64,000 nucleotides of DNA from IMGVR_UViG_3300043570_001980:186001-250000; one strand, 5' to 3'; shown: positions 3,001 through 61,974, counted from the stretch's first letter. Numbers and translations: made by a program. The notes: generated by a model not told the origin, from the letters alone.

Positions 3001-6000
3001 TAACAGACCTTTTTGTATTGAGCCATAGTCGCTCTTAATCCAGGCGGAATAGTTAAATTCCTGTGACGGCTGAACAATTGTACCTGCACTCCAGTATTCA
3101 TTTTTAAACAGTACAATCTCGCCTTTGGCGTATTTTTTGTTTGGTATCCAGGCCACAATGTTGTCCTGGTTTAAAACAAATCCCGGAGCGTCAACTGTAC
3201 CGTTCCAATCACCACTTAGTGTACCAAATACACGAATACGGCTTTGACGTGCTCCAGTTACTGGTTGATAAATCAGGTCAGCAAAAATACTAGTGTTGTC
3301 AAGAACTGCAAGGTGTTCGTAAGCGGTAAATTTTAAATTTAAAAAGTTAATGGTGTTTGAAGTTAAACTAGAAACTTTAAATGTATTACCAAAACGATCA
3401 ATTTGTAAATCTGTTCCAGGAACAGGTGTGCGATTTTGATTTAAGATAATGTTATCAATGGTTACCGGCACTAGGCTTTCTACTACTGCACCTGGACGTG
3501 TGACAGAAATTGATGTTGCTGCCGGGTTAAGATTGATAATTGCACCTGGTGCCCAGCCCTGATTGCTCCAGTATACAAATTCCTGGGCCATTTGCTGCCA
3601 GTTAAGTGCAGAACCATTTTCTCGATTTTCAAAAATCAAGCCTTGAGTTTCAAGAAGTTTACCGTAGCTTAAAATAAAATCGCAAACTGCGGCCTTGTTA
3701 GTAAACACATATCCGTATGGAACTTGGGCCACTGTGTCAGAGTACTCGACTGGAACACTGATATTGACACCATTGGCAGAAATAGTTAGTGTCTTTCCGC
3801 TTGGCTTTGATACCAATATATCAAAATAAGGGGAGTTGGTACTGTATCCATACACGGCCCACCCATCCTCGGTGCTTTGAACAACAACAGAGCTGTAGAT
3901 AATCTTGGAGAACGGTTGATTTTTGTACAGCAGTAGTTGATAGCTTTCGTCGGGTAACATTAAACTTGCATTTAAACTGTTTGGTGTAGAGCGTTCAGTG
4001 TAAATTTTTAAATAATTTTTGTCGCTGAATGCAGCCATTCTCCAGCAGAGTCTTACATCAATGTTATATAATGCATCAGTTAATCCTGTTGTGCTGTTGA
4101 TACCTCTCTGACGATTGTAGTCAATGATCCAGTCAATATAACTGGCTTTGCTGACTCCGTTACCATACAAAGGCTCTAGATGTTTAGCGTCAAGTCGGTA
4201 ACGATTGTCCCATAGATATTGCTCTTGCGCAGAATCATATACATAACGATCTCTGTCGGCAAATAATGCAAAAAACTTAGCAGGTTTAGTTAGTGCCAAT
4301 AATCTCATCACAGCAAACGGCCATGAACTGCTGGTACGCCAAGATGATTCCACTGGGCCATCATCACCAAACACCCAACTACGTCTGAAACTGGTTTGAT
4401 CAAAATTTCCAACTATTGAATTAAACGGGCTGGTTAACTCTCCTTCAGACCCCGACGGGATAACCTGAGTTAGTCCATTACGTACATACAGTGGATTAAC
4501 ATAGTGACCAACTGGGTCTTTAATTAATCCTTTTTCAAGATCTTCCCACAGAACCAAGTTTCCTGATGTGTATGGTGCAGGACCGTATTCTGCTTCCCAC
4601 CAATATGGTTGCTCACTAAACCCAAGCATTTCCCAAGGAGTGGTATTAGGAGTAATTGTGTCGTAGAAATATAAGTAGTTGCCGCGCCAGCCACCCAGCA
4701 ATGGTTTGTTATCTAACTTGTTTGCACTTTGGCTGTAATTGTATGTAAACGGATCCAATGGTACATAAAACTGAGTATTGTAGTCAAGTTTATTCCATCC
4801 TACCCAGCTTAAAAAATCTTCGCTGAGAATCTCATTGATCTCAGTAAGAGAATATTGTGTGGTTCTAAACTGTCCAGGCATGACTTCATCTAGAACCATT
4901 GGGATTTCACTAATAATTTTTAGATTATTAAAAATTCGTGTTTCAAATTCTAACAAAACCTGATCTCGAAAATCCCCAAATGCCACAGTGATACTGCCGT
5001 CATGCCCCTGTATTACTTCTGTTGGATTGACATAAGTGTCCGACACAAACATAGATGGTTTAAATGACGGATACAATCCAATCTTTGTTGGTGTGTTTGG
5101 AACGTAGCTACCATAAGTTGTATCATATTCTCGAATCTTGATAACATCTCCAATTGCCAGAGTTGCTGTGATTGTCATTGTAGGAGAATCAGCAGATACT
5201 GTATAATCATAACCGCGAGTTAGAATGTTACCATTCAAATAAACTAGCAGGCTGTGGTAGTTTGAAGATGTAAAACTATAAATTTTTGTTAGATCAAATG
5301 TACTGTCGCTAGTGAACGAATATGTGTACGTTGTCTCAGTATACGTTTCTCCGCTGGGGATCATGTCACTCCAGTAGAATGGTGACAGGTTTGATCGTCC
5401 TATTGAAATTTCTTGTAATACAGAATCCAGCACCTGAGTCGGTGTTAAATTAATATAATTTCCTTTGGCGGCCAAGTCCAGCAACAATGATTTATATTTT
5501 GTGTATTCCTGACTATTAAATCTTAGAGAATTAAACAACTCATATTGTTGTTCTCTGAGAAATACACCCGTTAGTGCCAACGGAGAGGAGTGTTGCACAA
5601 TATTGGCACCGTAGGGAATTAAATCTCCGAGATCTCGAGTGTTATTTGCGCCATTGATTGGTCCAACAAGATCTTTAAGATTTTGTCCAATAGTTTCATA
5701 GTGAGTTCTAATTGTGCCAAGAGTGTACGATCCGCTATTTTCGTTAAGAGGATTGTTTTCAAGATTTAACGGAACTTGATAGAATCCAACTTTACTTGGG
5801 TAGTTACTCAGTGCTTGTAGTTCAATTATTGTGCCAACCGGCGGCGGCGCTGCCAATTCAATTATGGTATTTTGTCCGCTAATAGTCACTGAATAGTTGC
5901 CTGGGTCAACAAACACGCCCTCAATAAACATCTGTACTGCTGGAAAAACCGACGTAGTTGTCACGGGCACATCGAGTTTTAAGTTTTCACCGTTGTACGT

Positions 6001-23209: not shown

Positions 23210-24973
23210 GTGATTAATATTAAAACTCTGACTGTTAAAAACTTTATGAGCGTGGGTAATTCTACTCAAGCCGTTGATTTTGATCGTAAAGATCTTACAC
23301 TTGTGCTAGGTGAGAATCTTGACCTTGGTGGAGATGGCAGTCGGAACGGTACCGGTAAAACTACTATTATCAATGCTCTTAGCTATTCATTATACGGGCA
23401 GGCATTGACCAATATTCGCAAAGACAATCTTGTTAACAAGACCAATGGCAAAAACATGTTGGTCAGTTTAGATTTTGAAGTGAGTGGGAAAAATTATCGA
23501 ATTGAGCGTGGTCGAAAACCCAACGTGTTGAAGTTTTATGTCAACAGTCAAGAACAAGAAATCACCGACGATAGCCAAGGAGACAGCAGAGAAACACAGG
23601 ATGCTATTGAACACATACTTGGTATGAGTCACGATATGTTTAGACATATTCTAGCACTTAACACTTATACTGAACCTTTTTTAAGTCTCAAAGCCAACGA
23701 TCAGCGAACTTTGATCGAACAGTTGTTGGGAATAACGTTGCTGAGTGAAAAGGCTGAACGTATTAAAGAATTAAACAGAGAAACCAAGGACTCTATCAGC
23801 CAGGAAGAGTTTAGAATACGTGCAGTTCAAGAAGCAAACAAACGGATTGAAGAACAAATTGACAGTTTAAAGCGTAGACAAACATTATGGATTACCAAGC
23901 GAGCTGAAGAAATTACCAAACTACAGACAGCGTTAGAAGCATTACAAGAGATTGATATTGATGCAGAAATTACTGCACACCGTGAACATACTGCTTGGGA
24001 TAATAGAAGAAAAGCATTCAACGACTTGCAAACTAAACTAAGTCGAGCAAAGCTAGAAGTTCAACGTGAAGAAAAAACAATTAAAAAATTGTCTGATGAG
24101 ATTGTTTCATTAGAAGCACATACCTGTCACACTTGCGGACAGGCATTTCATGATGAGAAACACGAGCAAGTGTTGACTAATAAACGCACTGACTTAGCTG
24201 ATGCAAGAACACGATGCACCGAGCAAACTACCGAAGTCAGTGAAATTCAAAACGAGTTAGATGATATCGGCGCAGTCGGCAAACCTCCAGTGATGTTCTA
24301 TGACAACGAAGAAGATGCTATTCATCATCGTGCTACATTGGCCAACCTACAAACACAGATTGATAGCAAGCAACAAGAACAAGATCCGTATGCTGAACAA
24401 ATTAGCGACATGCAAGAACAAGCATTGCAGGTGGTTGACTATGTTGGATTAAATGATCTAACCAGAATGCAAGAACATCAAGACTTCTTGTTGAAGTTAT
24501 TGACTTCAAAAGATAGTTTTATTCGCAAAAAGATTATTGAGCAAAATTTAAGTTATTTAAATGCTCGACTAACGCACTATCTAGATAAAATTGGGTTGCC
24601 GCATCAGGTTGTATTTCAAAATGATCTCAGTGTTGAAATTACCGAACTGGGCCGTGACTTAGACTTTGATAACTTATCGCGTGGTGAACGCAATAGACTT
24701 ATACTGTCAATGTCCTGGGCATTCCGTGATGTTTGGGAAAGCTTATATCATCCAATCAATGTGTTGTTCATTGACGAACTTGTTGATTCAGGTATGGATA
24801 CCCAGGGTGTTGAAAACAGTCTTGCACTACTTAAAAAGATGAGTAGAGAACGTCATAAAAGTATTTGGTTAGTAAGTCACCGAGATGAACTTGCTGGTCG
24901 TGTAGAAAATATTTTACGTGTTGTAAAAGAAAATGGATTTACATCCTATAACAATGATGTAGAGATGGCCTGA
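23210..24973 (+). CDS. gp46: Recombination ATPase subunit (gp46/SbcC/Rad50)
   Basis: KNFMSVGN, Walker A NGTGKTT, coiled coil with CHTC zinc hook, LSRGE signature, Walker B LFIDE, VSH. Start likely GTG 23210; the track's TTG 23174 overlaps a promoter-like TTGGCC-18-TACAAT. Confidence 0.93.
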   Translation: MINIKTLTVKNFMSVGNSTQAVDFDRKDLTLVLGENLDLGGDGSRNGTGKTTIINALSYSLYGQALTNIRKDNLVNKTNGKNMLVSLDFEVSGKNYRIERGRKPNVLKFYVNSQEQEITDDSQGDSRETQDAIEHILGMSHDMFRHILALNTYTEPFLSLKANDQRTLIEQLLGITLLSEKAERIKELNRETKDSISQEEFRIRAVQEANKRIEEQIDSLKRRQTLWITKRAEEITKLQTALEALQEIDIDAEITAHREHTAWDNRRKAFNDLQTKLSRAKLEVQREEKTIKKLSDEIVSLEAHTCHTCGQAFHDEKHEQVLTNKRTDLADARTRCTEQTTEVSEIQNELDDIGAVGKPPVMFYDNEEDAIHHRATLANLQTQIDSKQQEQDPYAEQISDMQEQALQVVDYVGLNDLTRMQEHQDFLLKLLTSKDSFIRKKIIEQNLSYLNARLTHYLDKIGLPHQVVFQNDLSVEITELGRDLDFDNLSRGERNRLILSMSWAFRDVWESLYHPINVLFIDELVDSGMDTQGVENSLALLKKMSRERHKSIWLVSHRDELAGRVENILRVVKENGFTSYNNDVEMA

Positions 24974-25512
24974 TGCTTGAGTTTGAGTTAGAAATAGCAT
25001 CATCACAAGGTCGCACACCAGGATACCTACGGGTAGATGACCAAAAGACACACCTGTCAGATCCATTGATACATGCTAAATTTATTATTCAAGACCTAGG
25101 ACAATTAAAACTTGTGTTTGGCGGCAAGACAGAAAACGATACGGTAATAGACAGTAATGGTAATATTGTTGCTGATACAGAATTTAGAATCCTTAATATT
25201 AGATGCAATCAAATCAAACTAGAACCCTGGATACTAACTGATTTTGTTTATTACCCTGATTACTTTAGCGGGTATCTACAACAGTTTCCAGACTCTCCGA
25301 TAACTATTACTAGCCCATATCAATATAATTTTCCCGGAACAATAGAATTTAATTGGGTTTCTAATTTTTGGGATTGGTATTTTGAAGAAAAAAATAAACG
25401 AGAAGTCATTGGTTTCTTAGAAAAAGATCCTGATCGTGTTTGGAAGTTTCGTGGCAGTTTAGATCCCTGTGAGGATCTAGTAGAAAAAATAAAAGAACTA
25501 ATACAGCTATGA
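24973..25512 (+). CDS. Hypothetical protein coupled to the radical SAM gene
   Basis: 179 aa ORF overlapping the gp46 stop and the radical SAM start (ATGA). Confidence 0.7.
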   Translation: MLEFELEIASSQGRTPGYLRVDDQKTHLSDPLIHAKFIIQDLGQLKLVFGGKTENDTVIDSNGNIVADTEFRILNIRCNQIKLEPWILTDFVYYPDYFSGYLQQFPDSPITITSPYQYNFPGTIEFNWVSNFWDWYFEEKNKREVIGFLEKDPDRVWKFRGSLDPCEDLVEKIKELIQL

Positions 25513-27086
25513 AACGATTTGCATTTATCAACGTACCAAGTCAAGAGTTAGAAAGACCACCAGCCGCCGCCGCGGCCATAAGTGCTTGTGTACGTAGTGC
25601 TGGTTGGGAATGTAACGTGTATGATTTTAATTTGTTTTTACACAGCAATGTAACTACAGATGTGTGGGTTGAACTTGAACAATACTGGCGTTGCAAAAAA
25701 TATACACTAGAACCCGAAACTCAACAAATATTAAATGACACCATTGATCAATTTTTAACAACTGTAGCTGAGTTTGAGCCTGACATGGTTGGGATTTCTG
25801 TGTTTACTAGATTCAGTGTTATCCCTGCCAGTGTGATGTTGCAGAAGGTACGAGATCAATTAAACTGTAAAATTGTCATAGGCGGAGCAGGTAGCTATGC
25901 TTGGCCAGGAAGTTTGCCAAATTTAACCAAGAACCCGCTGGCATTAGATGCCACAACGTTTGCTGACTATGCACTAAAGACCGGATTAGTTGATTACTAC
26001 ATCCAAGGAGAAGGTGAACAGGCCATCATTGAATTATTAAATGGCAATGATAACTCCAACGGAGTTAACGGAAACCCAGCAGTTCAAATTCGTAAATTAG
26101 ACAAGCTGCCGCATCCTGAATACGAAGGCATTGACCCATCAAATTACTATTACACATCTGAGCCGGGAATTTATATCACTGCATCAAGAGGCTGTGTTAG
26201 GAATTGCAAATTTTGTAGTATTTCAGACATGTGGCCAAAGTATACTTCTCGTAGTGCCGATGATATTGTAAAAGAAATTATCAACGGAAAGAAAAAATAC
26301 AATGTCAACCTATTTCACTTTACCGACAGTTTAATCAACGGTAATATGAAAATGTGGAGAGAAGTAAATCAGCAATTAGTACAAGCTAAAAAACAAGACG
26401 TCAGTTTAGAACCAATAAAATATCTTGGTCAGTTTATTTGTAGAACAAGATTTGATCAAACTGAAAAAGACTGGGAGTTAATGGCCAAGGCTGGTTGTAA
26501 TATGCTGGTCACTGGATTTGAATCTTACAGTCCTCATGTTAGAAAACACATGGGTAAAAATCACACCAATGCAGATATTGATTTCCATTTTGCACAGTCA
26601 GCATATTACGGAATTAAGAATGTTTGTTTAATGTTTGTTGGATACCCTGTTGAAACATTGGAAGACCATAATTATAATATTGAATTTTTACACCGGTATC
26701 AAAAATATGCTCGAGCAGGAGTGATTCACATGGTACGTTGGGGGTACACTGGTATGTTCCGTGAAGAAGGCAAGCTAGCTGGTGATTCAAAAGTAAAACT
26801 AATTACTGATCCAGACTTTGCCAAACGTTTTCATAACCTACCACAAGGGCTTCGTGACATTGCACTGGGCTTTGGATGGGTAAATGAATTAAACCCAACA
26901 CTCACACTAAAAGAACGCATCCGTCGTCGACTAGAGTTACACGAAGTAAGTGTAAAACTAGGATGGCCACAGACTCGTAACAGAGAAGAGTTACAAATTT
27001 TATATAACATTTTACAAAACCTTGACAAGAATGTCATCAACACTCAGGATTTTGAAAACTTAGAAACCTTATTAGATTTTCATTAA
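25509..27086 (+). CDS. Cobalamin-binding (class B-like) radical SAM enzyme
   Basis: N-terminal B12-binding-like region (PDMVGISVF..IVIGG..GEGE) and SRGCVRNCKFC CxxxCxxC; FTDSLING, GFES and FVGYPVET motifs. Confidence 0.88.
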   Translation: MKRFAFINVPSQELERPPAAAAAISACVRSAGWECNVYDFNLFLHSNVTTDVWVELEQYWRCKKYTLEPETQQILNDTIDQFLTTVAEFEPDMVGISVFTRFSVIPASVMLQKVRDQLNCKIVIGGAGSYAWPGSLPNLTKNPLALDATTFADYALKTGLVDYYIQGEGEQAIIELLNGNDNSNGVNGNPAVQIRKLDKLPHPEYEGIDPSNYYYTSEPGIYITASRGCVRNCKFCSISDMWPKYTSRSADDIVKEIINGKKKYNVNLFHFTDSLINGNMKMWREVNQQLVQAKKQDVSLEPIKYLGQFICRTRFDQTEKDWELMAKAGCNMLVTGFESYSPHVRKHMGKNHTNADIDFHFAQSAYYGIKNVCLMFVGYPVETLEDHNYNIEFLHRYQKYARAGVIHMVRWGYTGMFREEGKLAGDSKVKLITDPDFAKRFHNLPQGLRDIALGFGWVNELNPTLTLKERIRRRLELHEVSVKLGWPQTRNREELQILYNILQNLDKNVINTQDFENLETLLDFH

Positions 27087-27148: not shown

Positions 27149-27577
27149 ATGACATGGCTATTTCAAGACACCCCAGTTGAGACATTGCCCGAAGAGTGTG
27201 TTGGATTTGTTTACTTGATTACAAATAATCTCACTGGTCGCAAGTACATAGGCAAAAAACTCGCAAAATTTTCAAAAACCACATACAAAACAGTAACACA
27301 AAAAAACGGCATAAAAAAGCGGAAGAAGATACGCTCGAAGATTGATTCAGATTGGAGAGAGTACTACGGGTCAAGCCCAGAATTAACCGCAGACGTAATC
27401 AAACTAGGCACCGAAAACTTCACCAGAGAAATACTTTATTATTGCAACTCCAAATCAGAATGCAGTTACATTGAAGCAAGAGAACAATTTTCAAGACGAG
27501 TATTAGAATCGCAAGATTATTACAACGGCCATATACAAGTTAGAGTACACGGTAGTCATATTAGAGGAAAACTATGA
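27149..27577 (+). CDS. Small GIY-YIG-family nuclease
   Basis: GFVYLITNNLTGRKYIGKK..YYGSS..FTREIL..E..YYN. Confidence 0.8.
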   Translation: MTWLFQDTPVETLPEECVGFVYLITNNLTGRKYIGKKLAKFSKTTYKTVTQKNGIKKRKKIRSKIDSDWREYYGSSPELTADVIKLGTENFTREILYYCNSKSECSYIEAREQFSRRVLESQDYYNGHIQVRVHGSHIRGKL

Positions 27578-28380
27578 GTGAAATTTTTTTACAAAAGTTT
27601 TATGACAATGTCAAAGATTTGTCTTGGCCTCAACTTATTGAAACCTACAGTGACTTTGTAAAATTGCCCGATAGTATCAAAAACGAATGTTATCAACAGC
27701 ATGGACTAGAATCAACACTGAATCAAATTGAAGATTCCGATTACTGGCTTGCCAGTCATCGGTCCAGGGTAGTGGTGTACCGACATCATTCTTTGGTGTT
27801 TATACCTGTGCCAAAATGCGGATTTATTTACTATCATGATTTGTTTACTCGTATAGGGTGGGAACAAATTACCCTGGACAAAGTAAATTTTGATCAGCAC
27901 ATTGTTTTTACTGCTATCATGAATCCAACGGATCGATATCTCAAAGGCTTAACTGAGTGGTTCTGGAAAAGAATTAGATTTGATAATTTTGACAATTTAG
28001 AACAGCAAGAACTATTTTTTAACATAGCATCTGACATACTGATTACTGATATACACACAATGCCATACACCGTCGAATATCAAGGTATTATCAATAAGAT
28101 ACATTGGATTCCGTCTGACAACTTGTCTGACAACGAAGTAAAACAATCAATGATGCATTTGTTTAAAAAACACAATTACAATATACAGCTACCACTTGAC
28201 GACCCCCGATTACATCAATCCAACCCAAAAAAACTAAAGCTTTACCAGGCATTAAAAAATGTACACATCCGTAAAAAACAAAAAACTTTTGAATTGTTGT
28301 ACGTTTTTTTAGCAGAAGATTTAAAATTTTACCGGCAGCTAGTTAATAAATTTGACCCAACTTGGTCTAAAAACATTTAA
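27574..28380 (+). CDS. Sulfotransferase-fold-like protein with an N-terminal KxxxWP mini-domain
   Basis: VFIPVPKCG (5'-PSB-like), MNPTDRYLKG (3'-PB-like RxPxxR), D.HT.P and terminal EDLKFY resemble Sulfotransfer_2-type proteins; motifs are degenerate. Confidence 0.5.
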   Translation: MSEIFLQKFYDNVKDLSWPQLIETYSDFVKLPDSIKNECYQQHGLESTLNQIEDSDYWLASHRSRVVVYRHHSLVFIPVPKCGFIYYHDLFTRIGWEQITLDKVNFDQHIVFTAIMNPTDRYLKGLTEWFWKRIRFDNFDNLEQQELFFNIASDILITDIHTMPYTVEYQGIINKIHWIPSDNLSDNEVKQSMMHLFKKHNYNIQLPLDDPRLHQSNPKKLKLYQALKNVHIRKKQKTFELLYVFLAEDLKFYRQLVNKFDPTWSKNI

Positions 28381-28394
28381 TTTTAAGCAGTTAC

Positions 28395-28826
28395 GACTCG
28401 CACAGGTCAATTTCGTGTGCCCTAGACCTGGATCTCGGATCACAGGGACGGAAGTCTTGCCGCTCTAGCAAGCACTCAATCACTACCCGAAAGGATGACG
28501 ATCGCTAATTGCCGCGGTTTGATTGTTTGAAAAGAATTTAAAGGCTAAAAAGACGCAGAAGTGATTCTGCAGGTTAATATAGTATGTTAGCGTATATTAT
28601 ATTGATTGCCGTTGTATAAAGACGCAACTCGAGGTACCGGACAACCGCCTCTGTAATGTTGTAACGCTATGTGGCTATTCGAACTCGGATAATGCTTTTA
28701 ATCTTTGCCCTGTGCGGGCAAAGTGTGACCAAAGAATCTGGATAATAACTGTAATCTCACTTCGCTCGATGTTTATAATAATATTGATGAGCGATAGCGA
28801 AATCAATAGAACTTCAACGAAGTTCT
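28395..28826 (+). ncRNA. Candidate structured non-coding RNA (or replication-origin/ssi-like structured DNA)
   Basis: ORF-free gap with at least 9 hairpins, including GCAGAA-GTGA-TTCTGC and CC-GAAA-GG (GNRA loops), CTTTGCCC-TGTGC-GGGCAAAG, CCTGGATC-TCG-GATCACAGG, a G.U-containing AATATAGTATGT/GTATATTATATT stem, and GAACTTC-AAC-GAAGTTC. Confidence 0.5.
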
Positions 28827-28836
28827 CATAAAGCCG

Positions 28837-29172
28837 TTATAAGTTAGTATCTGGCCAATCTCTAAACAATGCATGTTGAATATCACCAGCAACAAACTGA
28901 TTGAATGACTTGTGTTTCTCTTCGAGTTCTCCTTTGAGTGGTGCTACTCGTTTGAACGCATTGTCCATCTGACCCATGTCTCTAAACTCCATGAGTATCA
29001 TCCACTCTGGCATGTCGGCAATACTACGGAATCCCATTTTACATCTTGTGATTCTGTACGATACCATCTTGTCTTCGGAGATCAAATGATCAAAGAAACT
29101 TTTCATTCCGTTGACCCAGTCTAAGTCTGAGATATCGCCTTCTTTGTTTGCCCAAATTGTGTATAAGTCCAT
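28837..29172 (-). CDS. Small conserved protein (DUF6614-like, possible dimeric alpha/beta barrel)
   Basis: 111 aa; YRITRCKMGFRS..PEWMILMEF..QMDNAF..H..F..ALFRDWPD; last gene of the amidinotransferase operon. Confidence 0.55.
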   Translation of the reverse strand: MDLYTIWANKEGDISDLDWVNGMKSFFDHLISEDKMVSYRITRCKMGFRSIADMPEWMILMEFRDMGQMDNAFKRVAPLKGELEEKHKSFNQFVAGDIQHALFRDWPDTNL

Positions 29173-29173
29173 T

Positions 29174-30145
29174 TTATATTTCCTCTCTGTGAAGATCGCT
29201 GGTTACACAATGCAGACCATTGTCCCAAAAACACTTGTGTCTAAACTGTGAAACATGCGGAGTAACTTGATGCCGTTTGAGTGCATCAAATATTTGTTGA
29301 TTGTAGCCACTGATCACTACATTTTTATTGTCGATGATCAACATGTTTAATTCAAAAACAGTTTCTGCTACATAACCCAACAAATTCTTAAAGTAACAAT
29401 CAATAAACTCTGTGAGTTTATTATTACTTTCTTGCCCTGGCAACCACCAAGATCCTGTGTGTGTTGCTTGCCAATTCTTAAATGATGGTAATTTTTCTAG
29501 ACTGGGTTTGATATAAACTATTTCCCAATCATAGAAATACATTTTAAAAAATAGTTTTAGTAGTTGGTGATTTGCAGGATCGTCTATGGCTATAATCAAT
29601 CCTGGTGTAACAGGACAAAACCATCCATCAATATGCCCAGTCTGATGAAAAGCTGTTAATTTTTTATTGCTGGCTCTATTTTGTAAAAATTCATGAGCTG
29701 ATTTATTATTAGAATAAAATACACAGTCGAGAAATTGATAAACAGTGGCACCACACACTGATGGTAGATTAATTTCTATTTCTTGATTACCCTGAGCAAT
29801 CACATGATCAGAAATGTTTTTATAAAAATCCGGATCTATGTTATTGTAAAATGATTTAACAAGTTTATTTCCTAGCATTAACAAATGATCCCTGGCTGCC
29901 AACGGCGCCTTTGGTAGATTGTCAACATCAACATCAACAACACCTGCTGTTGGCCTAAGCGTGTGTACTCCAAGAGCATTCAGATTAACTGCTAGTGTAT
30001 GTAGGTCTTCTTCGGTTTCACTGGCAATTGTTTCAAAATGATTTCGAATCTCAACGTTGTTGATCCAACTATAAAACTCAGGACTCCAACTGCGGCCAAC
30101 CACACAGGTTTTTAGTCTATGCCATTCGCTGTTAATCTGATACAT
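29174..30145 (-). CDS. Amidinotransferase-family protein (copy 2)
   Basis: SEWHRLKTCVVG, ARDHL, GHIDGWF, FELNML and C-terminal DNGLHCVTSDL (His and Cys catalytic motifs of the AGAT/StrB1 family). Confidence 0.85.
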   Translation of the reverse strand: MYQINSEWHRLKTCVVGRSWSPEFYSWINNVEIRNHFETIASETEEDLHTLAVNLNALGVHTLRPTAGVVDVDVDNLPKAPLAARDHLLMLGNKLVKSFYNNIDPDFYKNISDHVIAQGNQEIEINLPSVCGATVYQFLDCVFYSNNKSAHEFLQNRASNKKLTAFHQTGHIDGWFCPVTPGLIIAIDDPANHQLLKLFFKMYFYDWEIVYIKPSLEKLPSFKNWQATHTGSWWLPGQESNNKLTEFIDCYFKNLLGYVAETVFELNMLIIDNKNVVISGYNQQIFDALKRHQVTPHVSQFRHKCFWDNGLHCVTSDLHREEI

Positions 30146-30588
30146 TACACCAACGGACCTAATATCTCAAAGCCATCAATATCTTGTTTGTATAAATGTG
30201 CTTGCTCTAAGTATAAAAATTTAAAACCACGCTGTTTATAGATAGCACATTCTGTTTTCATTGTTTCAATGCCTAGTCGCATTTTGGGTCGATGATAGGT
30301 CCAAGCAAATTGGTCGCATTGTGCGTTATACTGGTCAAATCTACGTATCAGGCTAAATGCAACCAGTTCAGCGTTGTCGTAGTAGCCAATGATGTCAGCC
30401 ATTGGATCTTGATAGCGACTGTGAAATATAGGCATTACTGATGAAAAATGTTTGTAGGTACAGTAGTACTTGTATATTTCATCTAGCTTGTTGAGTGTGG
30501 TTTCATCACGATCAGTGATGTAATTCCAACCAACAGTGGGTAGGTAATTGGTTTTATCTAGGTCAATTCTGGCAAATTGATAAGTCAT
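30145..30588 (-). CDS. Arginyl-tRNA-protein transferase (ATE/Bpt) C-terminal-like GNAT-fold protein
   Basis: GYYDNAELVAFSLI..FAWTY..RLGIETMKTECAIYKQRGFKFLYL..YK resembles the ATE_C pattern (LG..S...EI..A...G..YLYLG..YK). Confidence 0.55.
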   Translation of the reverse strand: MTYQFARIDLDKTNYLPTVGWNYITDRDETTLNKLDEIYKYYCTYKHFSSVMPIFHSRYQDPMADIIGYYDNAELVAFSLIRRFDQYNAQCDQFAWTYHRPKMRLGIETMKTECAIYKQRGFKFLYLEQAHLYKQDIDGFEILGPLV

Positions 30589-31814
30589 GTTCTATCCGGA
30601 AAAAAATCTTGCTGGATACCTTTTCGGTCCAGGTCCAAGGTAACACAATGTACACCACCGTCCCAGAAGTATCTGTGTCGCAAAGGGCAAATGTGAGGAG
30701 TTATGTTGTGACGTTTAAAAGCATCAAATGCTTTTTCATTGTAGCTGTTGACAATGACATTTTGTTGATTGATCACAAGGATATTTACATCAAACACACT
30801 TTCCTCAACATACCCTACCCAATCTTGCAACCATGTTTCTACATATTCAATCAGTTCGTCATCGTATTCACTACCCTTGATCCACCAACGCCCTTGATTT
30901 TTTTCTTTAAGGTCCAAAAATGATTTCACTTTGTTCCAGCCTTCTCCGCTCAGGTATACAACTTCCCATCCAGGAAATGTATCTGCATAGGTAGGCATAT
31001 CTTCTATGCTCACAATAAGACCAGGCTTAACAGGAGTAAAACAACCGTCGATATGTCCACCAGTGGTCACAATATGATTTCTAAAGTCTGGAAAAAAATG
31101 TTCAGTTAGTTTTTTGATTTTGTCGATATCGGCAGATTCAGATATCCCAAAAAATAAATCTTTTCCGATACGGGTGATTCCATTAGTTGGAATTTGATTT
31201 AACATGTCATGATATTGATTTTCAATGATAGGATTACCAGCTGACTTCACAAGACCAGTAACCGGTTCCCACCAGTCGAACTCACTAGCCTTGGATATAA
31301 TTTCATCAGAATTGTCACCAGGTTTAAACTCAAACTGAAACAAGTTTTTACATTCTTCTTGGATCCAAACTGGCAGCTGATCAAATGGAGTAAATTCTTG
31401 TGGCCAATCAGGACCTTTAAAGTTGTTGTAATTTTTTTTAGTCCAATTACCAGGAGGCATGATACTTCGTCCTGATGATTTTATGCTGATGTTGTCGTAA
31501 GGAAACACAAAAAAGTCTGATCCAATCATAATCATCTGATCTCTTGGAATCATGCTAACAGGGCCAGGTATGCGACGATTTTGTGTCAGTAACCGATCTA
31601 GTTGTACTGTGGGTACATTTGGTCTTACAGTCTTTACATTGAACTTTTCAAGTAATGTCACAAGATTCACAAAGTCTTCTTCAGTTTCAGTAGCAATACG
31701 TTCAAACAAACTGCGTAATCGTGGATTTTTTATAAAGCTATAAAACTCAGGAGGATAACTTTTACCCACAACACAAACTTGCAATGGATCCCACGGTTGA
31801 TGTACACTATACAT
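30585..31814 (-). CDS. Amidinotransferase-family protein (copy 1) with an internal KxxxWP insertion
   Basis: WDPLQVCVVG, PRDQ, TRIGKD, GHIDGCF, FDVNIL and DGGVHCVTLDL motifs. Confidence 0.88.
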   Translation of the reverse strand: MYSVHQPWDPLQVCVVGKSYPPEFYSFIKNPRLRSLFERIATETEEDFVNLVTLLEKFNVKTVRPNVPTVQLDRLLTQNRRIPGPVSMIPRDQMIMIGSDFFVFPYDNISIKSSGRSIMPPGNWTKKNYNNFKGPDWPQEFTPFDQLPVWIQEECKNLFQFEFKPGDNSDEIISKASEFDWWEPVTGLVKSAGNPIIENQYHDMLNQIPTNGITRIGKDLFFGISESADIDKIKKLTEHFFPDFRNHIVTTGGHIDGCFTPVKPGLIVSIEDMPTYADTFPGWEVVYLSGEGWNKVKSFLDLKEKNQGRWWIKGSEYDDELIEYVETWLQDWVGYVEESVFDVNILVINQQNVIVNSYNEKAFDAFKRHNITPHICPLRHRYFWDGGVHCVTLDLDRKGIQQDFFPDRT

Positions 31815-43728: not shown

Positions 43729-43795
43729 TTAAAATCCTTTTGTTTAGTGTAAACTATTTAGGCAATATTGTCAATAATTTTGGTTAAATAGTGTT

Positions 43796-44458
43796 GTGGC
43801 CAAAATATTTTATACACCCCCGGGATACTCAGGTACTGCCCAATTAACAGCATCAAACGGTCTTGTAATTGAAAATCAAGCTCGCTGGCGTTTCAGTGAA
43901 CAAGGATACAACGACGGGGCAACGTTTGGTGTTAGCCTTAGCTGGCCCGATAAAGCTGTGGGTGAATTCAGCTACGGGCAACCAGCACAAAAGATCAAAC
44001 CTGAATCTTCTGGATTATTACATGTTAAAGGAACAAACTGGCCTATAGCAGTAATTGGCAATTCTCTACAGTCATACACCAATCCTGACACTAGCCAAAC
44101 ATATCCAGCCAGCCAATGTAGGATTTTAGTAACGGGTCACTGGCAAGTTAATCGTCAACCAAACAGCAACTCATGGAACTCAATAGGAGTTTTTTATAAA
44201 GGCTTAACCACTACCGATCTCGGAGACAGGGATATGGATCCGTACTTGTTGAACTATAACTCCCCAGATGCAACTTATGTAATTCAAGGAGCCAATGTCA
44301 CTGGCGGTGCCCAAGATACATTTACCACTCGCGAATTTTCCTGCAGATGCGAACACAGCACAACCAGCAATAATTCCAATAGAGAATATCAATCCAATGC
44401 AATTGCTCAACCTATATTTGTGTACACATACAGCATGAGTTGGGAAATAGAAGTTTAA
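43796..44458 (+). CDS. Hypothetical (probably virion) protein
   Basis: 220 aa, GTG start 5 nt after TAAATA (43785-43790). Confidence 0.6.
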   Translation: MAKIFYTPPGYSGTAQLTASNGLVIENQARWRFSEQGYNDGATFGVSLSWPDKAVGEFSYGQPAQKIKPESSGLLHVKGTNWPIAVIGNSLQSYTNPDTSQTYPASQCRILVTGHWQVNRQPNSNSWNSIGVFYKGLTTTDLGDRDMDPYLLNYNSPDATYVIQGANVTGGAQDTFTTREFSCRCEHSTTSNNSNREYQSNAIAQPIFVYTYSMSWEIEV

Positions 44459-44460
44459 CA

Positions 44461-44558
44461 TAAATACTTGTCAACACAATCAGGTGTTTTATGCTGAGAT
44501 TAATACCCACAGCGTAGCGGCTAGAACCCGCATCGGACTTCTTTAAGGAGAAAACAAA
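44461..44558 (+). promoter_or_regulatory. Late promoter followed by a structured 5' leader
   Basis: TAAATA at 44461, then three adjacent hairpins (AACAC/GTGTT, TATGCTG/CAGCGTA, GCGG/CCGC) before AAGGAG. Confidence 0.5.
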
Positions 44559-45077
44559 ATGGGTCGTCCTCTAAAAATTAAAAAATCCACAACCAAAGAC
44601 ATTGGTTTTAACAATCTTGGCAGTTTAACAAATCCAGTATATCCAACAACATTAAACTCGTCTCAATACCTGGGTGTGGTTGGCGGTGAGAACACCAGCG
44701 TGGCCACCACAGCTTATCCGGTGATTCGTGTGCAAGCATGTGAAATTGGCGGTGCTGAAGAAGAAGCTATCATTGTGCGCCAAAAAGGAAGCACAACATA
44801 CTTGGTACTGGGGCAAACCAGTGGAAATACATATCAAGCCACTCTGGCTAACGAAGCCACTGGTGCATTGTCACCAGGCAACATGAACATTGCTATGTTT
44901 AATGGCGATAGTACAGACATCTTGATCAGCAAACTCACAAACAAGTGGGCACTGGACTATTCAGTACCACCAGTTCGTTATGTGATTAACTTCTTCAGTG
45001 ACGAAGGCACAGAGATCAAGTCTGGCACCGTCGGTGTGACCAACAACTTGGCCATTGCAGAAAATTACACCAGCTAA
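44559..45077 (+). CDS. Virion structural protein (putative head decoration/fibre base)
   Basis: 172 aa, MGRPLK start, IVRQKG motif, strong SD, late promoter. Confidence 0.6.
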   Translation: MGRPLKIKKSTTKDIGFNNLGSLTNPVYPTTLNSSQYLGVVGGENTSVATTAYPVIRVQACEIGGAEEEAIIVRQKGSTTYLVLGQTSGNTYQATLANEATGALSPGNMNIAMFNGDSTDILISKLTNKWALDYSVPPVRYVINFFSDEGTEIKSGTVGVTNNLAIAENYTS

Positions 45078-61661: not shown

Positions 61662-61731
61662 AGTGTACTATTTATGGGTGGCATTGTAGTTTAGTTTAAA
61701 GCTAGTGTGTTCTAAAAACAACACTTGACAG

Positions 61732-61760
61732 TTGACAAATAATTCAATTGCTGTTATAAT
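61732..61760 (+). promoter_or_regulatory. Consensus sigma70 early promoter
   Basis: TTGACA-17 nt-TATAAT with TG extension. Confidence 0.85.
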
Positions 61761-61786
61761 TACAACTTAACCAAAAGGAGTATATA

Positions 61787-61930
61787 ATGGAATGTACACA
61801 TTGCAGAAAATGGCATTTTAAAGGAATTGAATCCTGCGACACCGCACCCAAACGGCCCACACCTCCTAAAACAACAACTCCGTTGTCAACTCCGTTGTCA
61901 ACTCCGTTGTCAACTCCGTTGACCGAATAA
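61787..61930 (+). CDS. Small early protein (47 aa) with a CxxC..H..C motif and (STPL)n tail; absent from the ORF track
   Basis: AAGGAG at 61775-61780 and ATG 61787: MECTHCRKWHFKGIESCDTAPKRPTPPKTTTPLSTPLSTPLSTPLTE*. Confidence 0.6.
   Translation: MECTHCRKWHFKGIESCDTAPKRPTPPKTTTPLSTPLSTPLSTPLTE
61875..61921. repeat. 12 bp tandem repeat CAACTCCGTTGT x~4
   Basis: Three full copies plus an 11 bp copy; each unit contains the CAAC-N3-GTTG palindrome. Confidence 0.95.
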
Positions 61931-61947
61931 TCTGAGTCTGCTATAAT
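61919..61947 (+). promoter_or_regulatory. Second sigma70 early promoter
   Basis: TTGACC-17 nt-TATAAT with TG extension. Confidence 0.8.
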
Positions 61948-61974
61948 ATACACTTGTACAACAAAGGAGTGTAT

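What the first reader, a model, noticed from the sequence alone, without database searches (positions are those of the whole stretch)
28381..28836. ~450 nt ORF-free, hairpin-packed region: candidate large ncRNA downstream of a GIY-YIG gene
Seen: the largest non-coding gap in an otherwise tightly packed window, at the point where two operons converge. It holds at least 9 stems, two closed by GNRA tetraloops (GAAA ~28489, GTGA 28561), and a 12 bp stem (28577-28603) that needs G.U pairs, which favours folding of the + strand as RNA. A motif recurs: GATCTCGGATCA (28431), GAACTCGGATAAT (28681), GAATCTGGATAAT (28735). It matches no tRNA, tmRNA, RNase P or group I core I can recognise. Inference: an undescribed structured RNA co-transcribed with the small GIY-YIG protein (27149-27577), possibly as its RNA partner, with the sulfotransferase-like gene as a later insertion between them.
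Basis: partly seen in the sequence, partly recalled or inferred. Interest (0 to 1): 0.8.

Follow-up and report, generated by a model that had tools for sequence, protein, structure and literature searches.

The report
Known Polynucleobacter-1 RNA, much longer
The ORF-free stretch is a real, intricately folded RNA gene of about 430 bases in an uncultured freshwater jumbo phage; its first third is the already catalogued Polynucleobacter-1 RNA (Rfam RF01718), its function is still unknown, and its last ~165 bases, with two short segments that are always identical to each other, were not modelled by its describers or by Rfam.

Summary
Real feature, but not undescribed. Window 28395-28528 (+) matches Rfam RF01718, Polynucleobacter-1 RNA, at 120 bits (gathering score 37). 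Its 2010 describers had already noted that it lies downstream of a gene family related to cyanophage P-SSM2 PSSM2_218. I show that family is the window's small GIY-YIG protein.

New here:
- Conservation and compensatory base changes continue about 300 nt past the Rfam model, to ~28826. That gives one ~430-nt RNA with at least 15 helices and two well-supported pseudoknots (a third is tentative): 97 pairs, 93.9% canonical in 83 distinct sequences, 70 with double changes, G.U 570 versus A.C 154.
- It is carried by more than 120 uncultured viral contigs and by Polynucleobacter/Burkholderiaceae chromosomes and MAG contigs.
- Two segments, M1 (28683-28694) and M2 (28736-28747), change often but stay identical to each other (118 of 119 loci, 8 haplotypes, and unrelated sequences in divergent subfamilies). 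No complementary partner was found.

The sulfotransferase-like gene is indeed an insertion between the GIY-YIG gene and the RNA.

A dedicated RNA-GIY-YIG partnership is not supported. The protein occurs in 507 cultured-phage records without the RNA. The RNA occurs in bacteria without the protein. No co-evolution signal was found. Function remains unknown.

The parts
27149..27577 (+). Small GIY-YIG protein gene (142 aa). It is the usual upstream neighbour of the RNA. Here its C-terminus was rewritten by the insertion.
   Evidence: Pfam PF19835 SegE_GIY-YIG, E 3.6e-33; phrog_447. Homologues of 71-85% identity end just before the RNA in relatives. It is 39% identical to P-SSM2 PSSM2_218.
27574..28380 (+). 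Sulfotransferase-like gene (268 aa), inserted between the GIY-YIG gene and the RNA.
   Evidence: Found only in the window's own three contigs; a homologous 283-aa gene occupies the same position in L065. ESM Atlas look-alikes are viral Sulfotransfer_2 clusters, score 0.95. No Pfam hit.
28383..28394 (+). Remnant of the original 3' end of the GIY-YIG gene (old last codons plus a mutated stop).
   Evidence: Aligns with the gene ends of L013, L017, L018 and L025, which read ...TTAAGCAGTTAA directly before P1.
28395..28528 (+). 5' domain, equal to the Rfam Polynucleobacter-1 model. Helices: P1 28400-04/16-20, P2 28427-34/38-46, P3 28456-60/68-72, P4 28477-82/20-25, P4a 28487-88/93-94, P5 28500-05/14-19.
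   Evidence: RF01718 at 120 bits, E 2e-27, full model 1-141. Helices are 98.6-100% canonical with compensatory changes.
28511..28545 (+). PK1 (tentative): the P5 loop 28511-13 pairs with 28543-45.
   Evidence: GC 40 / CG 31 exchange at 28511/28545; 89% canonical, all 3 pairs covary.
28554..28606 (+). P6 hairpin (28554-57/68-71, GNRA-type loop here) and the long P7 hairpin (28573-85/94-606).
   Evidence: All 12 P7 pairs show double changes, 93-94% canonical. P6 covaries, but MAFFT aligns it poorly (72% canonical). Both correspond to the 'tail' hairpins of the 2010 alignment.
28587..28670 (+). PK2: the P7 loop 28587-93 pairs with 28664-70.
   Evidence: 7 of 7 pairs covary, 97.9% canonical, no A.C.
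28611..28662 (+). PK3 (28611-15/28641-45) lies inside the P9/P10 hairpin (28624-28/58-62 and 28632-35/47-50).
   Evidence: PK3 is 96.4% canonical with 3 covarying pairs. P9 has 5 of 5 pairs covarying. P10 is 100% canonical.
28668..28694 (+). Module A: a UGUGRC box, a linker, then segment M1 (28683-28694).
   Evidence: Direct repeat of module B. The M1 core is identical to the M2 core in 118 of 119 loci.
28703..28723 (+). P11 hairpin (28703-10/28716-23).
   Evidence: 91.9% canonical; 28706/28720 exchanges U-A, C-G and A-U. 28618 co-varies by identity with 28720.
28721..28747 (+). Module B: a UGUGAC box, a linker, then segment M2 (28736-28747).
28783..28807 (+). P13 (28783-88/802-807) enclosing the conserved GAGCG-N3-AGCGAA. 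I read this as tandem G.A pairs plus a 2-bp P14 with a GNRA-type loop.
   Evidence: 6 of 6 P13 pairs covary. P14 is 95.7% canonical. The motif is also kept in the bacterial copies. The G.A reading is inference.
28808..28826 (+). P15 terminal hairpin, the probable 3' end of the RNA.
   Evidence: 7 of 7 pairs covary. Only 10 of 50 relatives have 4 or more T in the next 9 nt, so it is not a canonical intrinsic terminator.
28837..29172 (-). Convergent DUF6614 gene. It is a variable neighbour and not part of the RNA.
   Evidence: Pfam PF20319, E 7e-21. Present downstream in only 11-13 related loci.

Best explanation
Window 28395 to about 28826 (+) encodes one non-coding RNA of about 430 nt that belongs to the Polynucleobacter-1 family (RF01718).

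Shown:
- The Rfam model covers only the first 134 nt. The conserved, covarying fold continues through a double-pseudoknot middle domain and a 3' domain built from two repeated modules.
- It is an accessory RNA gene found both in viral contigs and in bacterial genomes. It occurs in more than 120 uncultured viral contigs, whose nearest cultured SbcC relatives are PA5oct-like jumbo phages. It also occurs in Polynucleobacter/Burkholderiaceae chromosomes and MAG contigs, next to DUF6641 and (in two of the six loci) a tyrosine integrase; whether these are mobile islands was not tested.
- In phages it starts at the stop codon of a small GIY-YIG gene, at the junction between the SbcC (recombination) module and the baseplate module.

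Inferred:
- It is made by read-through of that operon and trimmed to a stable RNA that ends at hairpin P15.
- It acts in trans as a scaffold. The nearly invariant 5' core forms the body. The 3' domain displays two copies of one short, fast-changing recognition sequence (M1 = M2) to a two-fold or two-copy partner encoded elsewhere, in the host or the phage.
- That would make it a specificity-bearing RNP or decoy in conflict between mobile elements and hosts, rather than a dedicated cofactor of the GIY-YIG protein.

My confidence differs by layer: identity and structure about 0.95; independence from GIY-YIG about 0.7; the scaffold and two-site mechanism about 0.25.
For: - Family: RF01718 at 120 bits.
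- Extent: identity to 29 relatives stays at 55-90% from 28400 to ~28760, and falls off beyond ~28800 and upstream of 28395 except in the closest relatives.
- Structure: the top mutual-information pairs are nearly all Watson-Crick exchanges. Of 97 pairs, 93.9% are canonical and 70 show double changes. The 65 pairs beyond the Rfam model are 91.3% canonical, against 72.9% (maximum 73.9%) in 300 column shuffles and about 40% when the partner is slid.
- Strand: G.U 570 versus A.C 154.
- Distribution: the exact 29-mer occurs in 54 viral contigs and a degenerate pattern in at least 120. There are six bacterial loci with RF01718 at 75-104 bits and the same full-length architecture. M1..M2 is present in 115 of 118 loci with enough sequence.
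- M1 = M2: 118 of 119 loci across 8 haplotypes. On a tree built without those columns there are 22 haplotype changes, and 6 of 6 independent pairs go the same way. Divergent subfamilies carry unrelated but again matching segments: AGCGAAA, AUCGAA, GUGUCAAGU, AGUCAAG.
- Independence from GIY-YIG: the protein family is in 507 cultured-phage records with no RNA match, and the gene is followed by only 0-148 nt. Bacterial copies have no GIY-YIG. Some phages have a resolvase-like gene or another gene upstream instead. No protein column tracks the M type beyond a control character.
Against: - No transcript data are available, so the RNA's ends, its stability and its trans action are all inferred.
- No partner was found for M1/M2, neither inside the RNA nor in about 700 kb of flanking sequence.
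- The tight stop-codon/P1 junction in about 100 loci would also fit a functional 3' UTR of the GIY-YIG mRNA.
- Recombination between phages may inflate the count of independent M-type changes.
- MAFFT alignment of the variable hairpins (P6, P12, P13, P15) is imperfect.
Confidence: 0.6

Rival explanations
1. The RNA is the dedicated partner (guide, scaffold or inhibitor) of the small GIY-YIG nuclease, which lacks a DNA-binding domain.
For: The gene and the RNA abut in about 100 of 122 phage loci. The protein is better conserved (71-85% identity) than SbcC (53-77%) in most of the same loci. The same linkage is seen in the divergent subfamily L177/L205 and was noted in 2010.
Against: There are 507 cultured-phage records with the protein and none with the RNA. 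P-SSM2, Melnitz, C48C1 and ACP17 leave only 0-148 nt after the gene. Bacterial copies lack the protein. Some phages keep the RNA but have another gene upstream. Insertions between the two are tolerated (window, L019, L027, L034). No protein column co-varies with the M type.
Confidence: 0.12
2. The phage RNA mimics a host-encoded RNA from the bacterial DUF6641 loci. The bacterial DUF6641-RNA pair would be a defence or addiction-type module, and phages would carry the RNA alone to neutralise it. M1/M2 would be the two binding sites of a dimeric host protein, diversifying in an arms race.
For: DUF6641 lies divergently upstream of the RNA in bacterial loci whose other flanks differ. Phage copies have no DUF6641. 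M types turn over fast while the scaffold is nearly invariant. No partner is encoded near the phage copy. The neighbouring window gene belongs to DUF6614, a family for which one member is reported as anti-Druantia (bioRxiv 10.1101/2024.04.14.589459).
Against: DUF6641 has no PADLOC hit. The bacterial M sequence (AGCGAAA) matches none of the phage haplotypes. There are only about 9 bacterial-type loci, with no M variation to test against the protein. In L184, DUF6641 is more than 5 kb away.
Confidence: 0.12
3. It is a cis-acting element: a 3' UTR stabiliser or terminator for the SbcC...GIY-YIG operon, or a 5' leader of the downstream gene.
For: It sits at the end of a + strand operon where transcription converges. 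In 18 loci a + strand ORF begins right after P15. The 2010 paper scored the family as possibly cis-regulatory.
Against: About 430 nt with pseudoknots and many invariant single-stranded bases is far beyond what a terminator or stabiliser needs. P15 has no U-tract in most relatives. The genes on both sides vary. In bacteria it stands alone, divergent from DUF6641.
Confidence: 0.08
4. It is a DNA-level element, such as an origin, iterons or recombination sites. The two direct repeats would have to be identical for strand exchange or for binding one protein.
For: M1 and M2 are direct repeats 53 bp apart (about 5 helical turns). The 'free to vary but identical' pattern is what crossover cores of recombination sites show (established knowledge of tyrosine recombinases). 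An integrase lies 0.6-1 kb downstream in two of the bacterial loci, L144 and L148.
Against: G.U outnumbers A.C 3.7 to 1, and 70 pairs keep pairing through double changes, which indicates a folded single + strand. The hairpin between the repeats covaries too. Phage loci have no integrase. 53 bp is very short for recombination between direct sites.
Confidence: 0.03

Closest known systems
Polynucleobacter-1 RNA motif (Rfam RF01718; Weinberg et al. 2010, Genome Biol 11:R31)
   Same: The window's 28395-28528 matches the whole model at 120 bits. The habitat signal is the same (freshwater, Burkholderiales), and so is the upstream gene family (GOS11034 / PSSM2_218, which is the GIY-YIG protein here). 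The authors' raw alignment already held an optional 'tail' equal to my P6, P7 and P9/P10, plus a putative pseudoknot.
   Different: The Rfam model stops at 141 nt. The authors had 16 sequences, found none in purified phages, and had no covariation for the pseudoknot. Here the RNA runs about 430 nt. PK2 and PK3 are supported by covariation. The 3' domain (modules A and B, P11, P13/P14, P15) is outside their modelled structure (in their alignment file it is unannotated flank). More than 120 viral contigs carry it.
GOLLD and ROOL, large ornate RNAs often carried by phages and prophages
   Same: They are also very large, multi-pseudoknotted non-coding RNAs of unknown biochemical function carried by phages. 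(From my own knowledge of the literature.)
   Different: There is no sequence or Rfam match. This RNA is smaller, and no association with tRNA genes is seen. This is a resemblance of kind only.
Guide RNAs encoded next to their enzyme on mobile elements (OMEGA omega-RNAs of IscB/TnpB; IS110 bridge or seek RNAs)
   Same: A structured RNA encoded beside a nuclease or recombinase gene on a mobile element. A conserved scaffold carries short hypervariable segments, and in bridge RNAs there are two recognition loops.
   Different: The GIY-YIG family clearly functions without this RNA. No target complementary to M1/M2 was found. In bridge RNAs the two loops read different sequences, whereas here the two segments are identical.
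Repeated identical protein-binding sites in RNAs (ToxI type III antitoxin repeats; lambda nutL/nutR boxB; box C/D and C'/D')
   Same: Two or more copies of one recognition sequence are kept identical within a genome but differ between relatives, because one trans factor reads all the copies.
   Different: Here there are only two copies, embedded in a large unique scaffold. No toxin or N-like reader has been identified, and there are no tandem unit repeats.

Membership tests
Polynucleobacter-1 RNA (RF01718) | Covariance-model score at or above the curated gathering score (37 bits) over the full model | tested here: met
   120 bits, model positions 1-141 of 141, E 2e-27.
Polynucleobacter-1 RNA (RF01718) | Model helices are kept through compensatory changes in relatives | tested here: met
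   P1, P3, P4 and P5 are 98.6-99.2% canonical with 3-5 double-change pairs each in 83 sequences.
Polynucleobacter-1 RNA (RF01718) | Located downstream of the GOS11034 / PSSM2_218-like gene, as the describers reported | tested here: met
   The GIY-YIG gene lies directly upstream in about 100 of 122 loci. The window protein is 39% identical to PSSM2_218. In the window itself, a 268-aa gene has been inserted between them.
Group I intron | Match to the group I core model, and interruption of a host gene | tested here: not met
   No Rfam hit even at E up to 10 in 28200-29000. The flanking genes are complete and convergent.
tRNA / tmRNA / RNase P RNA | Detection by ARAGORN or by the Rfam models | tested here: not met
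Nuclease-associated guide RNA (OMEGA-like) | The protein family depends on, and is consistently encoded with, the RNA | tested here: not met
   507 phage records carry the protein and none carries the RNA. The RNA occurs without the protein in bacteria and in some phages.
Nuclease-associated guide RNA (OMEGA-like) | The variable segment is complementary to a target | tested here: inconclusive
   Own-type motifs and their complements are not enriched in about 700 kb of flanks or in the 64-kb window. Whole genomes and host genomes could not be searched.
Intrinsic terminator / simple 3' UTR | A GC-rich hairpin followed by a U-run at the end of the unit | tested here: not met
   Only 10 of 50 relatives have 4 or more T in the 9 nt after P15; the window has 1.
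Type III toxin-antitoxin antitoxin RNA | Tandem unit repeats immediately upstream of an endoribonuclease toxin gene | tested here: not met
   Only two short repeats sit inside a unique scaffold. Neighbouring genes have no PADLOC hit apart from weak homing-endonuclease models for the GIY-YIG protein.

The most novel reading that the evidence does not exclude
M1 and M2 are programmable recognition elements. A conserved RNA scaffold found in phages and in bacterial chromosomes/MAG contigs would hold two identical 7-12-nt segments that read two copies of one nucleic-acid sequence (guide or bridge-like), or that contact each other position by position (a parallel, like-with-like interaction). Either would be a mode of RNA recognition not described for any bacterial or phage RNA family.
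Probability: 0.15. Interest if true: 0.85.

Novelty: new member of a known kind. Interest (0 to 1): 0.5.

Why it matters
Very large, highly structured non-coding RNAs with no known function are rare, and historically they have led to new biochemistry. This one has sat in Rfam as a 141-nt 'sRNA' seen in one bacterium and a few metagenome reads.

Three things change how it should be studied:
- It is about three times longer than the Rfam model.
- It is common in freshwater jumbo-phage contigs and also occurs in Polynucleobacter/Burkholderiaceae chromosomes and MAG contigs.
- It carries two segments forced to stay identical while they change rapidly.

Together these turn it into a tractable problem. 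Polynucleobacter asymbioticus is cultivable and carries a copy. The M1/M2 rule gives a simple mutational test: change one segment, or change both.

It also corrects the tempting reading that the RNA is the cofactor of the adjacent GIY-YIG nuclease.

Tried and rejected
- Cultured phages: blastn and tblastn of the region against GenBank phages found no RNA match and no 268-aa ORF match.
- First genome scan: the phage-type pattern gave 0 hits in genome contigs. A bacterial-type pattern was needed.
- Metagenome scan: 60 of 65 hits were chance matches and only 5 were family members.
- Long-range helix J1/2 (28422-26) x M2 flank (28737-41), proposed by RNAalifold. Rejected: the central pair is G-C in 49 sequences, A.C in 24 and U.C in 10, with no compensation. 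It is also absent in divergent subfamilies.
- M1 pairing antiparallel with M2. Rejected by inspection of the haplotypes listed: the AGAU and GCAU haplotypes would create mismatches.
- M core pairing with 28522-28528 (AUUGUUU). This is possible in 47 of 83 sequences, but the partner is G/U-rich and fixed, so it cannot enforce identity.
- Search for any column complementary to the M variable positions: the best is 0.72-0.78, which is background level.
- Own-type motif or its complement in the flanks or the window: no enrichment.
- GIY-YIG protein columns against M type: normalised MI at most 0.5, similar to 0.42 for a control character.
- A small ORF running from the ATG in M1 to the TAA in M2. 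Rejected: the M1-P11 linker length is not conserved modulo 3.
- DUF6641 homologues in phage loci: none.
- PADLOC on the neighbouring genes: nothing informative.
- PDB sequence search for the GIY-YIG and 268-aa proteins: nothing.
- Single-sequence fold z-scores are not discriminating.
- I did not use the count of structure pairs, to avoid typing long structure strings. The equivalent counts and controls were scripted.

Full report
**What is there.** Window 28381-28836 has no ATG-ORF of 50 aa or more. It lies where a + strand gene block meets a - strand block. The + block holds an SbcC-like gene, a radical-SAM gene, a small GIY-YIG gene and a 268-aa ORF. The - block holds DUF6614, two phrog_25854 paralogues and a T4-type baseplate hub gene. 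This is the second-largest ORF-free gap in the window, not the largest; 43729-44203 is 475 nt. Folding energy of the single sequence is unremarkable, with z = -1.57 on the + strand and -2.35 on the - strand. The case for structure therefore rests on comparison with relatives.

**It is a known family.** A scan of the whole window against Rfam 15 places RF01718, Polynucleobacter-1 RNA, at 28395-28528 (+). The score is 120 bits against a gathering score of 37, over the full model. Nothing else in 28200-29000 rises above chance. Weinberg et al. (2010, PMC2864571) described the family from 16 sequences: Polynucleobacter plus freshwater and estuary reads. Their supplement says most copies lie downstream of GOS11034-family genes 'with possible homology to PSSM2_218 in cyanophage P-SSM2'. 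It also says none was found in a purified phage and that the 3' half is not always detected. PSSM2_218 is 39% identical (E 2e-18) to the window's GIY-YIG protein.

**It is much longer than the model.** The window itself is part of a 342-kb viral contig. In 30 distinct sequences, and later 83, identity to the window stays at 55-90% from 28400 to about 28760, and falls off beyond about 28800 and upstream of 28395 except in the closest relatives.

**The extension is structured.**
- Mutual information with APC correction puts Watson-Crick exchanges at the top across the whole stretch.
- A curated set of 97 pairs is 93.9% canonical, and 70 pairs show double changes.
- The 65 pairs beyond the Rfam model are 91.3% canonical. 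Column shuffles give 72.9% (maximum 73.9% of 300), and sliding the partner gives about 40%.
- G.U outnumbers A.C 570 to 154, so the + strand is the folded one.
- Two pseudoknots are well supported. PK2 joins the P7 loop to 28664-70, with 7 of 7 pairs covarying. PK3 joins 28611-15 to 28641-45, inside the P10 loop. A third, PK1, is tentative.
- The authors' raw alignment already contained an optional 'tail' with hairpins equal to my P6, P7 and P9/P10, plus an unsupported pseudoknot.
- Everything after about 28665 was only unaligned flank in their file, even though the Polynucleobacter sequence clearly has it.
- 115 of 118 loci with enough sequence carry the 3' domain.
- P15 (28808-26) is a conserved, covarying hairpin without a U-tail in most relatives.

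**Gene context.**
- In about 100 of 122 phage loci, the ORF ending just before the RNA is the 141-146-aa GIY-YIG protein. Its stop lies 19-45 nt before the anchor, so it abuts P1.
- The 268-aa ORF is found only in the window's own contigs. It looks like a viral Sulfotransfer_2 protein. It sits within the last ~6 codons of the GIY-YIG gene, and the old gene end is still readable at 28383-28394.
- Other lineages have different genes in the same slot: a second sulfotransferase-like gene, a 207-aa GIY-YIG homing endonuclease, and a RusA-like resolvase in loci with no small GIY-YIG gene at that position.
- The genes downstream also vary.
- The locus is a plasticity point between the recombination module and the baseplate module. 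SbcC's nearest cultured relatives are PA5oct-like jumbo phages, at 51% identity.

**Is the RNA the partner of the GIY-YIG protein?** The evidence says no, at least not as an obligate partner.
- The protein family (Pfam SegE_GIY-YIG, phrog_447, often mislabelled 'NAD synthetase') is in 507 cultured-phage records. All are below 60% identity, and most are T4-like cyanophages.
- None of those records has the RNA. The gene there is followed by only 0-148 nt.
- Six bacterial loci carry the full-length RNA at 75-104 bits with no GIY-YIG gene. They include a complete Burkholderiaceae chromosome and a 747-kb Polynucleobacter contig.
- In those bacterial loci a DUF6641 gene lies divergently upstream, and in two of them (L144, L148) a small tyrosine integrase follows downstream, in otherwise variable surroundings.
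- No column of the GIY-YIG alignment tracks the RNA's variable segments better than a control character does.

**The unexplained feature.** The 3' domain holds two repeated modules. Each has a helix 3' strand, a UGUGAC box, a linker, A, then CUC (module A) or UCU (module B), then RGAURAW.
- The 7-nt cores M1 and M2 are identical in 118 of 119 loci, across eight haplotypes.
- On a tree built without these columns, the haplotype changes 22 times. In 6 of 6 independent pairs on supported branches, both copies go the same way.
- Divergent subfamilies have unrelated cores that again match within each RNA: AGCGAAA, AUCGAA, GUGUCAAGU and AGUCAAG.
- The fixed CUC/UCU difference lies between co-varying positions. 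This argues against gene conversion (inference).
- I found no complementary partner in the RNA, in the flanks or in the window.
- A second like-with-like covariation links 28618 with 28720.
- Candidate explanations are a dimeric or two-copy reader encoded elsewhere, a shared trans nucleic-acid target, or a direct position-by-position contact. None has been tested.

**Verdict.** The feature is real and robust, and it is a member of a known family of unknown function. The most likely reading is an autonomous, trans-acting accessory RNA found in phages and in bacterial genomes, made by read-through of the upstream operon. Its two identical segments would give it a changeable specificity. The mechanistic part of that reading is inference and carries low confidence.

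Noticed in passing
window 44472-44561 (+): A second Rfam hit: freshwater-2 RNA (RF02980) at 67.9 bits against a gathering score of 49.9. It ends at an ATG at 44559 preceded by AAGGAG, as expected for a 5' leader.
   Followed up: partly
window 43729-44203 and 61662-61974: Two further ORF-free gaps, of 475 nt (the largest in the window) and 313 nt. The first has no Rfam match at E up to 1. Neither was compared with relatives.
   Followed up: partly
window 28837-29172 (-): The gene convergent on the RNA belongs to DUF6614 (PF20319). A preprint (10.1101/2024.04.14.589459) reports a DUF6614-family ORF of phage DruSM1 with anti-Druantia type I activity. This hints that the junction holds anti-defence cargo.
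   Followed up: partly
window 24973-27086 (+): A 179-aa ORF and a 525-aa radical-SAM/B12-binding gene lie between SbcC and GIY-YIG. In many relatives (for example L004, L007, L015, L023) SbcC ends only about 300 nt before the GIY-YIG gene, so these also look like lineage-specific insertions.
   Followed up: no
L144:3949-4437 (-), L148:7274-7711 (+), L168, L184, L209: In the bacterial copies the conserved neighbour of the RNA is a DUF6641 protein (145 aa), divergently transcribed. A 188-aa tyrosine integrase lies 0.6-1 kb downstream of the RNA in L144 and L148, and small ORFs with signal-peptide-like N-termini (not annotated here) lie upstream.
   Followed up: partly
L177:~4950-5550, L205:~1610-2200: This is a divergent phage subfamily with the same SbcC/GIY-YIG context. 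It has about 140 extra nucleotides between the GIY-YIG stop and P1. That stretch shares a UUACUACUGAUA-like box with the bacterial copies, so the RNA may start further upstream in those lineages.
   Followed up: no
window 29174-30145 and 30585-31814 (-): Two paralogous genes both match phrog_25854 (unknown function), separated by a 147-aa ORF.
   Followed up: no
window 27149-27577; L140, L141 (Melnitz, C48C1): The small GIY-YIG family is widely annotated as 'NAD synthetase', which looks like a propagated misannotation. In Melnitz and C48C1 it sits a few small ORFs downstream of nrdA/nrdB, the neighbourhood that T4 denA (endonuclease II, also GIY-YIG) occupies. It may therefore be a DenA-like host-DNA nuclease rather than a homing enzyme. 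The T4 gene order is from memory and was not tested.
   Followed up: no
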